Assembly (NCBI GenBank): GCA_002269645.1
Contig: NIVC01000199.1
Location: 731,069-795,068, forward strand
DNA: 64,000 nucleotides
DNA from: Macrostomum lignano
Taxonomy: Eukaryota
Reading direction: 5' to 3'
Position 1 is the first letter of the stretch, and every line of letters begins with the position of its first letter. The translations under genes and the position numbers were made by a program. Below are positions 1 to 3,546 of the stretch, piece after piece. The notes under the pieces were generated by a model that was not told where the DNA came from, did no database searches, and was given only the letters and a program-made list of their open reading frames with translations.

Positions 1-3000
1 GCCGGCCTTGCATATCTCCTGCACGTGCTTGGTGAAGCTCAGTCTACTGTCGTAGGTAATGCCCAAGAATTTGGGGTTCGCTTCCCATCGCAGCTGCATA
101 CCTCTTAGGCCAACCATCACCTCCCTAGGAACTTTCTTTCTCCCGCTGATGCTGAACAGCGTCAAGGTGCATTTGCTGGGCGCCACCGGCAGCAGCCATT
201 TTTTGCTCCATTCATCAACGAGTTCCATCACCCCCTTAATTCTCTCCGCCGCTCTTTCGCTATCCTTGTCACACGTCCAGGCCGCCAGGTCGTCAGCAAA
301 CCCGCTCACTTCAACTCCTTCCAAATTGCCAATCATTTCCAGCAGGTCGTCTATAAAAATGATAAACAGGACCGGTGACAGCACGGAGCCTTGGGGCAGG
401 CCCTGCTTCATGCACACCGCTGTGCTGTCCCTGTCCTGGTAGCGGACAACGGCAAGTCGGTTAGCCAGCCAGCTTCTTATCCATCTCACCAACTTCTTGC
501 TCAGCCCTTTCTGCAGCGACTTCCACAGCAGCCCGTGCCTCCATACCTTATCGAATGCTCTCTCAAAGTCCACCAGGGCTAGCACTCCGCACTTCCCTTC
601 CTGAAAGGCATCCTCCATCGCCTGGGAGAGCCTAAGCAGTTGGTCCTCCGTGGATCTCCCTGCACGGAATCCTGCTTGGTTGTCGCTGAGACAGCCCTTA
701 CTCTCCAGGTGGTATTGCATTCTGTTGGCAAGGATCCGTTCCATCCATTTCCCAATGCAGGACGTGAGACATACCGGCCTATACGATCCAACTTCCGCTG
801 CATCCTTTCCTGGCTTGAGCAGCGGGATGATGCGTCCCGTTCTCCAGTTCTGTGGGACTTCCGAACTACTGAACGACCAGCTGAAGAGCTCGTGGAATAC
901 CTCAACCATGCAGTCCGGTAGTTCCTTCAGCAGCTTAGGGTGCACTTTGTCCGGGCCGGCCGCTTTGTTGCCATCCATTTCGTTGAGCGCTTGTCTCGTT
1001 TCCGCCATGCTCAGCTCTCTACCCTCACACGTGTCCGGACCTTCTTCGCTCAATAAGCGGGTCACCTGTCGTTTCGCCCATCCGTGACTTCTGGGCACTT
1101 GCACCCGGCTGACCTTGGCGTACTCTTTCGCGAAGGCTCCCGCTTTGGCACCATTTGACCTGTATTCCTTTCCTCCATGCATTAAGACTTCTCCAGCACC
1201 TCCTCCCCCCTTCTTGCCTTTAAGCTGGTTCAGTACATTCCACATCTTGAGCGACGTCGCGTTAGACTCCAGATGCTGTCTCCACTCCTGCCTCTTCTTG
1301 TCCCTGATCAGCTCCTTAGCGTTGCCGTCGAGCTCCATCCAACGTTCTCCGTTTCCTTCCTCCAAAGCTCTGTCTCTCTCTTCCAGCACATTCCGGACCT
1401 CTTCGTCCATCAGATTTCTATTCTTGGTGGTGATCACCTTCGTGCCGATGCAGCTCCTAGCCGCCGTTAAAACGACCCGTCTGGCTCCTTCCTCAACTCC
1501 AGCGATGCTTCTGCAATTAACTTTTTGCTCCCTATACCCAGCCTCCACGCGGTCCCTAAACGCTTCCCAGTCAGCCTTCTTCCAGTTCCAGCGAATCAGC
1601 CTCCTGGCCTTTTCTTCGGTCTTGCCACCCCCTGCTTGCAGCAGTATCGGGAGGTGGTCCGAGCTCAATTTCTGGAGGGTGCTCCAGGACCACTGCTGCT
1701 CCTGCGTATTGTGGCAGAAGGTGACATCGGGCGTCGACCGTATTCCTGTACCTTTGCTCACTCTCGTGGCGCTACCATCATTCAGGCACACTAAGTTTCT
1801 GTCGTCCGCCCACTCGGTCAACGTCGAACCTCTAGTGTCTTCTTCCACTTCACCATCCCAGGCCTCATCATGGGCGTTGAAATCGCCTCCCACTATCCAT
1901 TTCTCTCCGCTAGGCAGCCTGTTCAGCGATTTCCTCCATTCGCCATCTTCTCCTGGGGGCATGTAGCAGTTTAGCACATTCAGCTTACTCCCGTCTCCCT
2001 TTTGCACCTCCACCGCCATAGACTCGAGCCTTCCTTCTCCTTGCTCACTCGGTATTTTCAGCTTCTTGAAGCTCCATTCTTCCTTCACTATGATGGCCAG
2101 GCCTCCACCTCTCGCCTTCCAACATCCTATTTCACGGCGCCTGTCACTCCGTTGTAGCGCGTACCCTGGTATACAAGGGTCAGGGTCTTCTGTCCTCAGC
2201 TTCGTCTCCTGAATCAACGCAACATCCACGTCCTCCTCATCCAGTAGCTTGGCCAGCTCAGTACTCTTGGCATGCAGGTGGTCGCAGTTCCACTGAAGGA
2301 TTTTCCAGCAGGTTTGGTGTCCCTCGGTTGCTTCACTCCCCTGCCCGCTCATGCCCTCATCTCTCTCAGCCTCTTTCCTGTTCTTAGCCTGCTTGGCCAG
2401 GTCAGCGGTGCACTCGTTGCACTTCCATCCTCCTTTCACCTTCCATTCTTCCAAACGTTTCCTGCTGACTTCACCCACACAGCTCCAGTGCATCCTCTTC
2501 GAGCAGATCGCACAGCATGCTCCGACATTTCTGCGGCAGTAACGGAGGCATTCAGCACAGCGGACAGCCCTTGACTCCATATCTCTCCTTTCGAGCGGCA
2601 ATGTGCCCTGCACAGAGCATCCTCTGCAGGTCCAGGCAGCATTCTTTCCAGCTCTCCACCTGCTTAGGCCAGAGCAAGTTCTGTGGGCTCTCCGCTCGCA
2701 GAGCGTGCAGGCCACTCCTATAGTGCTCGCTCTCATCTTTTTGTTGCATTCAGTGCATCCAACATGTTCACACTCCGTCACCTCCATCGCCTCCTGCCCT
2801 CCGCCCGTCTGGTCGCTTCTTCCGACCTCGACACTTCCGTTGGTCTTCAACTCCGCACTGACAGTGTTTCGGATTTTCCGCTTTTCGACCTCCTCCCACG
2901 CCTGAGCAAGCGCTTTGTCGTACGCTCCTCTCCTATGCTTTTGGTGCCTCAATTCGTAGTTTTCCTCGAATTCCTCCACCAATCTCGTGCTGATCTTAGA

Positions 3001-3546
3001 CGTCCACTCACCATTCCCTAACCATTTAACCTTCTCGACTTCCTTGCCCTTCCTCTTCTCCAGTTCCACGTCTCCGTCCTTAAGCACCAGCGCCGGCCAC
3101 CAGGGCCATCCCGTGAGCTTAGCCCAAACCACCCTTCCTTCGTCTTCACTTTCACTCGCCTTCCCAGCTTCCGTCCTCTCTCTGCCCTTCACGCCTTCGA
3201 CGTCCGCAGCCTCGGTTACCGACTTCTCATCCTCCTCCTCCTTTCTCCTCTCCTCCACTCTGCAACACGGTCCCGTCCAAGCATTGCTAGCATTGGCGCC
3301 CTCCATCCTGTAGAAGTGACTCCTGGTGAGGTCACTGCACTTGAGGTGCATGACTCCCCCACACTCCGCACATCTCGGTCCTCTGCCTCCGGCCATCTTG
3401 CTACATACCGCGCATCTTTCCCTCTCATTTTTATTCTCCACCGGTCCCGGGTTCACTTCCACGTCCCCGCACCTAATTCTTCTCAAGTCCTCTTCCTTTC
3501 TTCTATTCTTGCGACCACTTGTCGGCGTAGTCTTGTAGGTTGGCAT
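1..3546 (-). CDS. Non-LTR retrotransposon (I-group, Ingi-like) single ORF: 2A-like, PHD, PWWP, PHD, PHD, APE endonuclease, reverse transcriptase; truncated by window edge
   Basis: Manual translation: ATG at 3546, 1182 codons with no in-frame stop down to position 1. Motifs: GDVEVNPGP (3442-3468); PHD CAVC..CAEC-GGVMHLKC..WTGPCC (3262-3414); PWWP VVWAKLTGWPWWPALV..VKWLG..AYDKALAQAWEEV (2887-3132); PHD CTEC..CTLC-ERRAHRTC..WTCRGC (2617-2757); PHD CAEC..CAIC-SKRMHWSC..WKCNEC (2410-2559); APE ILQWNCD, IQETKL, GGDFNAH, GSTPDVT, SDHLP; RT KAAGPD, SYRPVCLTSC, VDFERAFDKVW, GLPQGSVLSP, FADD, KFLGITYD. Confidence 0.93.
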   Translation of the reverse strand, partial: MPTYKTTPTSGRKNRRKEEDLRRIRCGDVEVNPGPVENKNERERCAVCSKMAGGRGPRCAECGGVMHLKCSDLTRSHFYRMEGANASNAWTGPCCRVEERRKEEEDEKSVTEAADVEGVKGRERTEAGKASESEDEGRVVWAKLTGWPWWPALVLKDGDVELEKRKGKEVEKVKWLGNGEWTSKISTRLVEEFEENYELRHQKHRRGAYDKALAQAWEEVEKRKIRNTVSAELKTNGSVEVGRSDQTGGGQEAMEVTECEHVGCTECNKKMRASTIGVACTLCERRAHRTCSGLSRWRAGKNAAWTCRGCSVQGTLPLERRDMESRAVRCAECLRYCRRNVGACCAICSKRMHWSCVGEVSRKRLEEWKVKGGWKCNECTADLAKQAKNRKEAERDEGMSGQGSEATEGHQTCWKILQWNCDHLHAKSTELAKLLDEEDVDVALIQETKLRTEDPDPCIPGYALQRSDRRREIGCWKARGGGLAIIVKEEWSFKKLKIPSEQGEGRLESMAVEVQKGDGSKLNVLNCYMPPGEDGEWRKSLNRLPSGEKWIVGGDFNAHDEAWDGEVEEDTRGSTLTEWADDRNLVCLNDGSATRVSKGTGIRSTPDVTFCHNTQEQQWSWSTLQKLSSDHLPILLQAGGGKTEEKARRLIRWNWKKADWEAFRDRVEAGYREQKVNCRSIAGVEEGARRVVLTAARSCIGTKVITTKNRNLMDEEVRNVLEERDRALEEGNGERWMELDGNAKELIRDKKRQEWRQHLESNATSLKMWNVLNQLKGKKGGGGAGEVLMHGGKEYRSNGAKAGAFAKEYAKVSRVQVPRSHGWAKRQVTRLLSEEGPDTCEGRELSMAETRQALNEMDGNKAAGPDKVHPKLLKELPDCMVEVFHELFSWSFSSSEVPQNWRTGRIIPLLKPGKDAAEVGSYRPVCLTSCIGKWMERILANRMQYHLESKGCLSDNQAGFRAGRSTEDQLLRLSQAMEDAFQEGKCGVLALVDFERAFDKVWRHGLLWKSLQKGLSKKLVRWIRSWLANRLAVVRYQDRDSTAVCMKQGLPQGSVLSPVLFIIFIDDLLEMIGNLEGVEVSGFADDLAAWTCDKDSERAAERIKGVMELVDEWSKKWLLPVAPSKCTLTLFSISGRKKVPREVMVGLRGMQLRWEANPKFLGITYDSRLSFTKHVQEICKAG
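3442..3468 (-). other. 2A-like (StopGo) motif G-D-V-E-V-N-P-G-P
   Basis: Matches the D-x-E-x-N-P-G-P consensus at codons 27-35 of the LINE ORF. Confidence 0.75.

What the first reader, a model, noticed from the sequence alone, without database searches (positions are those of the whole stretch)
1..3546. LINE whose single ORF fuses a PWWP domain and three PHD fingers to the endonuclease-RT: a possible self-encoded chromatin-targeting module
Seen: one stop-free frame, PHD-PWWP-PHD-PHD-APE-RT, absent from the ORF track because it exits the window. The PWWP keeps aromatic residues at the three cage positions (GW-PWWP and VKWLG, cf. DNMT3A VMWFG, LEDGF IFFFG) and the C-terminal helix. Established: PWWP domains bind H3K36me2/3 nucleosomes, and the LEDGF PWWP tethers HIV integrase to transcribed genes. 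PHD fingers are known in some CR1/L2/Ingi-type LINEs, and chromodomains in chromoviruses. I do not recall PWWP in a LINE ORF, but could not search. Inference: this element may steer its APE/RT to particular chromatin, such as gene bodies, using captured host reader domains, a LINE analogue of chromoviruses.
Basis: partly seen in the sequence, partly recalled or inferred. Interest (0 to 1): 0.88.

Follow-up and report, generated by a model that had tools for sequence, protein, structure and literature searches.

The report
Flatworm LINE carrying a PWWP domain
A young jumping gene (LINE) in the flatworm Macrostomum lignano has a histone-reading PWWP domain built into its own endonuclease/reverse-transcriptase protein, which none of its relatives has and no paper I could find reports, and which may let it choose where in chromatin it inserts.

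Summary
Window 3546..1 (minus strand) is one stop-free frame of 1182 codons that runs off the window. It reads 2A peptide, PHD-like finger, PWWP, two PHD-like fingers, AP endonuclease, reverse transcriptase.

- **PWWP:** it passes Pfam's curated cut-off (42.3 bits against 25.6). It matches the solved PWWP2B and DNMT3B PWWP domains. A confident AlphaFold model has only PWWP structures among its best 50 PDB matches. The three cage positions are aromatic (W147, W150, W175).
- **PHD fingers:** below Pfam's cut-off here, but they have C4HC3 spacing, and the homologous fingers of a relative pass.
a GDVEVNPGP 2A signal at residues 27-35.
- **Host and copies:** the host is Macrostomum lignano. A second, about 99% identical copy with the PWWP exists in a different 5' context.
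- **Relatives:** five related LINEs (38-45% identical), read on their own DNA or protein, have 2A plus two to four PHD fingers and no PWWP. Among 1.84 billion representative proteins, only that second copy combines this PWWP with APE/RT.
- **Literature:** five searches found no PWWP in a LINE.

Chromatin targeting remains an inference. This is a new variant of a known kind (2A-PHD single-ORF LINEs; transposons that capture reader domains).

The parts
1..3546 (-). Single long ORF of the LINE, codons 1-1182. It is cut by the window edge inside the RT 'thumb' region; the 3' part (rest of RT, RNase H, CCHC knuckle, 3' UTR) lies outside the window.
   Evidence: Stop-free translation. Stops in the same frame upstream of the ATG. 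Pfam domains.
3547..3630 (-). At least 84 nt of 5' UTR shared with the second copy (P0121). The true 5' end of the element is unresolved.
   Evidence: The P0121 gene model matches the window translation up to about 3630 and diverges upstream of that.
3442..3468 (-). 2A-like ribosome-skipping motif GDVEVNPGP (residues 27-35). It would release a 34-residue leader (3445-3546) from the rest of the protein.
   Evidence: Read directly from the sequence. The same position and motif occur in relatives P0006, P0028, P0124, P0125, P0151 and L001-L003. Described for LINEs in PMC3708506.
3262..3414 (-). PHD-like zinc finger 1 (residues 45-95), C4HC2 spacing with a terminal CC.
   Evidence: Cys/His spacing. 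44-57% identical to the first finger of relatives P0123, P0125, P0131 and L001, which share the CC ending. Only a weak C1_1 hit in Pfam.
2881..3138 (-). PWWP domain (residues 137-222). The C-terminal helix runs on to about residue 236 (nt 2839). Cage residues are W147, W150 and W175. A basic loop reads RHQKHRRG.
   Evidence: Pfam 42.3 bits against cut-off 25.6. PDB sequence hits: PWWP2B 4ld6 at E 9e-11, DNMT3B 6r3e at E 1.8e-13. AlphaFold2 model with pLDDT 85.6. All 50 best Foldseek PDB matches are PWWP domains, 4ld6 first.
2617..2757 (-). PHD-like finger 2 (residues 264-310), C4HC3 spacing.
   Evidence: Pfam PHD 18.3 bits, below the cut-off of 24. Spacing read. Invariant Cys/His columns in the alignment with relatives. 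Homologous fingers of P0124 score 49.6 bits on Pfam PHD.
2410..2559 (-). PHD-like finger 3 (residues 330-379), C4HC3 spacing.
   Evidence: Spacing. Aligned with the relatives' fingers. Weak PDB matches to the RCO1 and Pps PHD fingers.
1645..2298 (-). AP-type endonuclease (residues 417-634) with QETK, GDFNAH and SDH motifs.
   Evidence: Pfam Exo_endo_phos 50.6 bits and Exo_endo_phos_2 66.4 bits. Motif positions.
55..810 (-). Reverse transcriptase core (residues 913-1164) with the FADD active-site motif at residue 1083.
   Evidence: Pfam RVT_1 125 bits. 38-45% identity to APE-RT-RNase H LINE proteins.

Best explanation
This is the 5' three quarters of a young, apparently intact single-ORF APE-type LINE of Macrostomum lignano. 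Its lineage ancestrally carries an N-terminal 2A skipping peptide and an array of PHD-like fingers in front of APE-RT-RNase H. In this family, a PWWP domain of the PWWP2A/B type occupies the linker between finger 1 and finger 2.

Proposed mechanism:
1. The 2A signal releases a 34-residue leader.
2. The remaining protein (PHD, PWWP, PHD, PHD, APE, RT and the downstream domains) binds its own RNA and enters the nucleus.
3. The PWWP aromatic cage (W147, W150, W175) and the adjacent basic loop engage an H3K36-methylated nucleosome and its DNA, and the PHD fingers engage H3 tails.
4. This tethers the endonuclease to a particular chromatin state, most likely transcribed chromatin.
5. There the endonuclease nicks the DNA and target-primed reverse transcription follows.

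Shown here: the architecture, the integrity of every domain in the window, the PWWP fold and cage, its absence from relatives, and its presence in two copies. Inferred: the ligand, the tethering, and any insertion bias.
For: - One stop-free frame with all domains.
- PWWP above Pfam's curated cut-off.
- Sequence similarity to the solved PWWP2B, DNMT3B, MSH6 and NSD2 PWWP domains, with cage positions aligned.
- A confident model (pLDDT 85.6) whose 50 best PDB matches are all PWWP domains.
- The nearest PWWP sequences are named PWWP2A orthologues of Trichoplax, Nematostella and an arachnid.
- A second copy, P0121, is about 99% identical over 868 residues, has the PWWP intact, and sits in a different upstream context.
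- Relatives lack a PWWP at the same place: L001, L002, L003, L004/P0151, P0124 and P0125.
- APE and RT motifs are intact.
- Base composition is uniform along the ORF.
- The host is identified as M. lignano.
- It is established knowledge that PWWP domains of DNMT3A/B, LEDGF and NSD read H3K36me2/3 together with DNA.
Against: - There are no binding data and no insertion-site data.
- Only two copies were seen, and they are so similar that retention of the PWWP says little about selection.
- The copy in the window lies in minisatellite-rich DNA upstream of a gene, not in a gene body.
- The position equivalent to DNMT3B D266 is N178, and this position varies among PWWP families.
- The ligands of the PHD fingers are unknown, and in this protein the fingers score below the Pfam cut-off.
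- The P0121 gene model lacks 283 residues of RT, so that copy may be defective.
Confidence: 0.5

Rival explanations
1. The PWWP is a general nucleosome or DNA anchor. It raises the protein's affinity for chromatin, or helps nuclear retention or access to nucleosomal DNA during target-primed reverse transcription. It does not read a specific histone mark and causes no regional insertion bias.
For: By established knowledge, PWWP domains bind DNA non-specifically through a basic surface. The basic loop RHQKHRRG is conserved with the PWWP2-type loop. The one copy seen is not in a gene body.
Against: All three aromatic cage positions are kept. That would not be needed for DNA binding alone.
Confidence: 0.22
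2. The PWWP serves the element's conflict with the host rather than site choice. It might mimic host PWWP2A/B to interfere with or recruit NuRD-type deacetylase complexes. Or it might keep the new copy in chromatin that escapes piRNA/H3K9me3 silencing.
For: The closest family is PWWP2A/B. By established knowledge these proteins are part of a variant NuRD complex at active genes. M. lignano has an active PIWI/piRNA system against transposons (PMC4604429, listed).
Against: Only the PWWP domain is present. None of the PWWP2A regions that contact H2A.Z or MTA1 is present.
Confidence: 0.08
3. The PWWP is a neutral passenger: a recent chance capture of a host exon or retrocopy by template switching, carried by a small, very young subfamily, with no role in transposition.
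For: Only two nearly identical copies are known. No relative has the domain. The N-terminal module of this lineage is plastic, with 2-4 fingers and low-complexity inserts.
Against: The domain is only about 33-40% identical to any PWWP in 1.84 billion representatives, so the capture is not recent, or the domain has evolved inside the element. The frame, the fold and the cage are intact. Codon composition equals that of the rest of the ORF.
Confidence: 0.17
4. Artefact: an assembly or gene-model chimera that joins a host PWWP exon to a LINE.
For: M. lignano gene models do fuse LINEs to host exons: P0126 ends in a PIP5K domain, and P0121 starts with 142 foreign residues. The window also holds a suspicious 5.6-kb palindrome.
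Against: The PWWP lies inside one uninterrupted genomic reading frame, between LINE-specific fingers on both sides. The same arrangement occurs in an independent record from a different context.
Confidence: 0.03

Closest known systems
Single-ORF APE-type LINEs with an N-terminal 2A peptide and PHD finger(s) (Ingi, CR1, Crack, L2 and Rex1 clades; Odon et al. 2013, PMC3708506)
   Same: A 2A motif within the first ~40 residues, no ORF1, and PHD finger(s) between the 2A and the APE, followed by RT. The closest sequence relatives have exactly this plan plus RNase H.
   Different: None of those elements is described with a PWWP, and none of the relatives read here has one.
Chromoviruses (Ty3/gypsy LTR retrotransposons with a chromodomain on the integrase; Gao et al. 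2008, cited)
   Same: A retroelement carries its own 'royal family' histone-methyl-lysine reader fused to its integration enzyme. That is the working model proposed here.
   Different: A different element class (LTR with integrase, against LINE with APE and target-primed reverse transcription). A different reader (chromodomain for H3K9me, against PWWP, presumably for H3K36me).
LEDGF/p75 tethering of lentiviral integrase
   Same: A PWWP domain directs a retroelement's integration machinery to H3K36me3-marked transcribed chromatin (established knowledge; reviews listed).
   Different: There the PWWP belongs to a host protein recruited in trans. Here it is encoded in cis by the element. LEDGF is not the closest PWWP family (E 0.076).
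Arthropod Copia retrotransposons that captured a methyl-CpG-binding domain (de Mendoza et al. 2019, cited)
   Same: A lineage-specific capture of a host chromatin-mark reader into a retrotransposon polyprotein.
   Different: An LTR element, and a reader of DNA methylation rather than histone methylation.
PWWP2A/PWWP2B PWWP domain (PDB 4ld6)
   Same: The best sequence match (45 bits, E 9e-11) and the best structural match. They share the K/R-rich loop and the G-x-Y-x-x-A helix motif.
   Different: Only 31-40% identity. The host proteins have the PWWP at the C-terminus and no nuclease or polymerase.

Membership tests
APE-type non-LTR retrotransposon (LINE) | AP-endonuclease domain with catalytic motifs, N-terminal to the RT | tested here: met
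   Pfam Exo_endo_phos and Exo_endo_phos_2, residues 417-634. QETK, GDFNAH and SDH present.
APE-type non-LTR retrotransposon (LINE) | LINE-type RT with an F/YxDD motif | tested here: met
   RVT_1 125 bits. FADD at residue 1083. 205 LINE-like homologues at E<=1e-10.
APE-type non-LTR retrotransposon (LINE) | 3' end with a tail or simple repeat, target-site duplication, and 5'-truncated copies | not testable with these tools
   The 3' end lies outside the window, and no M. lignano genome collection is searchable here.
APE-type non-LTR retrotransposon (LINE) | Multiple dispersed copies | tested here: inconclusive
   One further copy, P0121, about 99% identical, in a different upstream context. There is no other copy in the 64-kb window.
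RNase H-bearing I/Ingi/Nimb-type group of LINE clades | RNase H and a CCHC knuckle after the RT, and placement in that group on an RT tree | tested here: inconclusive
   Relatives P0001, P0002, P0005, P0126 and P0151 have Pfam RNase_H. The P0121 C-terminus shows TDGS and QAEL remnants and a C-x2-C...H...C knuckle, but no Pfam RNase_H hit. No RT tree with reference clades could be built (no reference sequences were available).
2A-bearing single-ORF LINEs | [quoted passage not shown] | tested here: met
   GDVEVNPGP at residues 27-35. No ORF upstream other than repeat-derived ones.
2A-bearing single-ORF LINEs | Ribosome-skipping activity | not testable with these tools
   Needs an in vitro translation reporter. 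The tract upstream of the motif (DLRRIRC) is less hydrophobic than in relatives (LLLRAG).
PWWP domain (Pfam PF00855) | Profile score above the curated cut-off | tested here: met
   42.3 bits against 25.6. The second copy scores 40.4 bits.
PWWP domain (Pfam PF00855) | Beta-barrel plus C-terminal helical bundle fold | tested here: met
   Model with pLDDT 85.6, five strands and helices. All 50 best Foldseek matches are PWWP domains. The single-sequence model was poor (pLDDT 50).
PWWP domain (Pfam PF00855) | Three aromatic cage residues | tested here: met
   W147, W150 and W175 align with the cage positions of DNMT3B and PWWP2B.
PWWP domain (Pfam PF00855) | Binding of H3K36me2/3 nucleosomes | not testable with these tools
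   Needs a biochemical assay.
PHD finger (Pfam PF00628) | C4HC3 zinc-ligand spacing | tested here: met
   Fingers 2 and 3 have full C4HC3 spacing. Finger 1 is C4HC plus CC. The ligand columns are invariant among relatives.
PHD finger (Pfam PF00628) | Profile score above the curated cut-off | tested here: not met
   18.3 bits against 24 for finger 2; the other fingers are not reported. The homologous fingers of P0124 (49.6 bits) and P0028 (43.8 bits) pass. I therefore call them PHD-like by homology.
Chromovirus | Ty3/gypsy LTR element with a chromodomain at the integrase C-terminus | tested here: not met
   The ORF has no LTR, integrase or chromodomain. This is a functional analogy only.

The most novel reading that the evidence does not exclude
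This is the first LINE known to encode its own PWWP histone-H3K36-methyl reader. The PWWP, together with the ancestral PHD fingers, forms a multivalent nucleosome-reading head that directs the endonuclease and target-primed reverse transcription to transcribed chromatin. That would be a LINE counterpart, encoded in cis, of LEDGF-guided lentiviral integration and of chromodomain-guided chromoviruses.
Probability: 0.3. Interest if true: 0.85.

Novelty: new variant of a known kind. Interest (0 to 1): 0.62.

Why it matters
How sequence-non-specific LINEs choose insertion sites in chromatin is largely open. The known examples of self-encoded chromatin readers are in LTR elements: chromodomains, and one methyl-CpG-binding domain. 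A LINE with a built-in PWWP would be a natural experiment in retargeting target-primed reverse transcription through a histone mark. M. lignano has transgenesis and genome resources (PMC5730564). It would also give a compact, modular design (reader array plus APE-RT) of interest to people engineering retrotransposon-based DNA insertion. Finally, it would show that the N-terminal PHD module of these LINEs is a slot that can accept other reader domains.

Tried and rejected
- **Word-indexed protein search, N-terminal 415 residues:** no hits. That index evidently does not hold the UniRef-only M. lignano models, so the exhaustive representative search was used instead.
- **Metagenome contig scan, residues 37-322:** nothing.
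- **Exact-sequence look-ups to fetch DNA of further copies or the same locus:** P0121 and the window's RPUSD4 ORF are not on record. Three host ORFs are not in the collection. No dN/dS or copy census was therefore possible.
- **Single-sequence AlphaFold model of residues 119-260:** poor (pLDDT 50). Replaced by a model built from a 33-sequence alignment.
- **PDB sequence searches with the finger regions:** only weak hits with E>0.01. They neither prove nor disprove a PHD fold.
- **Supplementary RT reference set of Odon et al.:** not held, so there is no clade tree.
- **Possible PWWP-bearing integrases or transposases:** I checked whether the long PWWP-containing hits were of this kind. The 17 scanned are host-type proteins (DNMT3, an MLL-like SET-domain protein, N-PAC, PWWP2 and multi-PWWP proteins) with no RT, APE or rve domain.
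- **Literature searches:** PWWP with non-LTR/LINE/ORF2/retrotransposon/transposase/Repbase returned only papers on host PWWP proteins.
- **Rejected reading, host gene with a domesticated RT:** there are two near-identical copies in different contexts, and the 2A, APE and RT motifs are intact.
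Full report
**1. The observation**

Translating window 3546..1 on the minus strand gives 1182 codons without a stop. The frame opens at an ATG (3546-3544) and is closed by several stops just upstream. It is missing from the ORF list only because it runs off the left edge of the window.

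Pfam finds the following:

| Domain | Residues | Score |
|---|---|---|
| RVT_1 | 913-1164 | 125 bits |
| Exo_endo_phos / Exo_endo_phos_2 | 417-634 | 50.6 / 66.4 bits |
| PWWP | 137-222 | 42.3 bits, curated cut-off 25.6, E 1e-10 |
| PHD | 264-310 | 18.3 bits, below the cut-off of 24 |

The endonuclease motifs QETK, GDFNAH and SDH and the RT motif FADD are all present. There is no second copy of the element within the 64-kb window.

**2. The PWWP is real**

- **Sequence.** A sequence search of the PDB with residues 101-262 finds the PWWP of PWWP2B (4ld6, 45 bits, E 9e-11). It also finds a construct with two DNMT3B PWWP copies (E 1.8e-13), MSH6, NSD2/3 and ZMYND8/11, and only weakly LEDGF.
- **Cage.** In those alignments W147 and W150 (GWPWWP) and W175 (VKWLG) fall on the cage positions. 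N178 takes the place of DNMT3B D266; the residue numbering of DNMT3B is from my own knowledge. That position varies between PWWP families.
- **Fold.** A single-sequence AlphaFold model was poor (pLDDT 50). With a 33-sequence alignment of PWWP hits (A1) the model reached pLDDT 85.6 and pTM 0.76, with five strands and a long C-terminal helix. Its 50 best Foldseek matches in the PDB are all PWWP domains, with 4ld6 first.
- **Nearest family.** The nearest PWWP sequences among 1.84 billion representatives carry the PWWP2-type loop and helix motif (K/R-K-K/R-G-x-Y-x-x-A). Where named, they are PWWP2A of Trichoplax, Nematostella and an arachnid. Identity is only about 33-40%.

**3. The fingers and the 2A peptide**

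Fingers 2 and 3 have full C4HC3 spacing. Finger 1 ends in CC, and the first fingers of the relatives P0123, P0125 and L001 share that ending. In this protein the fingers do not reach Pfam's cut-off, and PDB sequence matches are weak. They are nevertheless homologous to fingers of P0124 and P0028, which score 49.6 and 43.8 bits on Pfam PHD. I call them PHD-like.

N-terminal 2A peptides, often followed by a PHD domain and usually without an ORF1, are described for LINEs of the Ingi, CR1, Crack, L2 and Rex1 clades (PMC3708506). No ORF1 is present here.

**4. Host and copies**

The RPUSD4-like ORF at 39980-41113 is 99% identical to a Macrostomum lignano protein (BOX15_Mlig014526g1), so the window is M. 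lignano.

The exhaustive search with residues 1-415 found one strong hit, P0121 (1429 aa, held only in UniRef and MetaClust).

- Over 868 aligned residues it differs from the window copy by three substitutions and one four-residue cluster.
- It carries the PWWP (40.4 bits).
- It continues beyond the window with the end of the RT, an RNase H remnant and a CCHC knuckle.
- Its first 142 residues are absent from the 60 kb upstream of the ORF in the window. It is therefore a different locus, fused to host exons by gene prediction.
- Such fusions occur elsewhere: P0126 is another M. lignano LINE model that ends in a PIP5K domain.
- The P0121 model skips 283 residues of RT. This could be a deletion or a predicted intron.

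So at least two very young copies share the architecture.

**5. Relatives lack the PWWP**

The APE-RT part has 205 homologues at E<=1e-10. The best are 43-45% identical and have APE, RT and RNase H. None of the 120 listed has PF00855.

I read the N-termini of the nearest relatives on their own contigs or proteins:

| Relative | N-terminal plan |
|---|---|
| L001 | 2A, four fingers, APE |
| L002 and L003 | 2A, low-complexity tract, two fingers, APE |
| L004 / P0151 | 2A, two fingers, APE |
| P0124 | 2A, three fingers, APE |
| P0125 | 2A, finger 1, 19-residue linker, finger 2 |

In alignment A2 the roughly 160-residue segment holding the PWWP fills a gap between finger 1 and finger 2 of the relatives.

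Among the 130 significant hits, 15 contain APE/RT and 89 contain a PWWP. Only P0121 contains both. The long PWWP hits I scanned are host-type proteins.

The PWWP is therefore a lineage-specific addition to an N-terminal module that is already variable. Codon composition is uniform along the ORF (GC3 0.60-0.70). Together with the low identity to any host PWWP, this argues against a very recent capture.

**6. Mechanism**

Most likely the 2A releases a short leader. The N-terminal head (PHD, PWWP, PHD, PHD) then binds nucleosomes. By analogy with DNMT3A/B, NSD, LEDGF and PWWP2A, the PWWP cage and basic loop would bind H3K36me2/3 and DNA, and the fingers would bind H3 tails. This would place the APE for nicking and target-primed reverse transcription.

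Only the anatomy is shown. The ligand and any targeting are inferred. I put about 0.5 on this reading.

The rivals are:
- a non-specific chromatin anchor (0.22);
- a neutral passenger in a tiny young subfamily (0.17);
- a role in conflict with host silencing or NuRD (0.08);
- an artefact (0.03).

The copy in the window sits next to a 17-bp tandem array and about 6.6 kb upstream of an Ig-domain gene on the other strand. That is uninformative about targeting.

**7. Comparison and novelty**

The backbone (2A-PHD-APE-RT single-ORF LINE) is known. Capture of chromatin readers by retroelements is also known: chromodomains in chromoviruses and an MBD in arthropod Copia (references seen). PWWP-guided integration is known in trans for LEDGF and lentiviruses (reviews).

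What I could not find anywhere is a PWWP inside a LINE protein:
- not in five full-text searches;
- not among relatives;
- not among 1.84 billion representative proteins, apart from the element's own second copy.

There are limits to this claim. Repbase and Dfam could not be searched. The protein itself is already public as an uncharacterised UniRef entry. The clade could not be named because no reference RT set was available.

**8. Verdict**

New variant of a known kind. Interest 0.62.

Noticed in passing
window 47560-53174 and 57866-63797: A near-perfect giant palindrome. The arms are about 5.6 kb and 97-100% complementary, broken up only by CT/GA-rich low-complexity stretches. The spacer is about 4.7 kb and holds an LTR/DIRS-type RT fragment ORF (55174-55695, RVT_1 56 bits) and a 168-bp tandem array of 5.5 copies (54089-55011). 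It could be a true inverted duplication or a long-read assembly artefact.
   Followed up: partly
window 4231-4622: A 17-bp tandem array (23 copies, 97% matches) lies about 600 nt upstream of the LINE's shared 5' UTR. It could be flanking minisatellite or part of the element's own 5' region or promoter. The 5' boundary of the element is unresolved.
   Followed up: no
window 4200-29300: Exceptionally dense micro- and minisatellites: (TCTA)n of 1.77 kb at 6944-8709, a 16-bp unit with 146 copies at 25228-27544, a 20-bp unit with 68 copies at 15560-16918, a 48-bp unit with 16 copies at 27997-28767, and others. They are interleaved with Ig-domain exons (10246-10791, 21646-23043) and produce many spurious long ORFs.
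   Followed up: no
window 32011-33744: An ORF of 577 aa with a gag-like zinc knuckle, a protease-like stretch and an rve integrase core (52.6 bits), ending in a GAGAGG-type repeat. It is a rearranged LTR-retrotransposon remnant.
   Followed up: no
window 35196-37207 and 39980-41113: Host genes: two adjacent Tudor-domain ORFs on the + strand, and an intronless RPUSD4-like pseudouridine synthase on the - strand. The latter is 99% identical to M. lignano BOX15_Mlig014526g1 and identifies the organism.
   Followed up: yes
P0121 and P0126 (M. lignano UniRef gene models): Both are chimeric gene models that fuse LINE ORFs to host exons. P0121 has 142 unrelated N-terminal residues and skips 283 residues of RT. 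P0126 ends in a PIP5K domain. Public M. lignano protein sets therefore contain LINE-host fusion artefacts.
   Followed up: partly
L001 1-2185, L002 1-760, L003 1-890, L004 1-646: In the metagenome and Logan relatives, the automatic gene calls start at an internal Met. They miss the 2A peptide and most PHD fingers, which lie in frame upstream. The number of fingers varies from two to four, and L002 and L003 carry a long Gly/Ala/Glu-rich insert after the 2A.
   Followed up: yes
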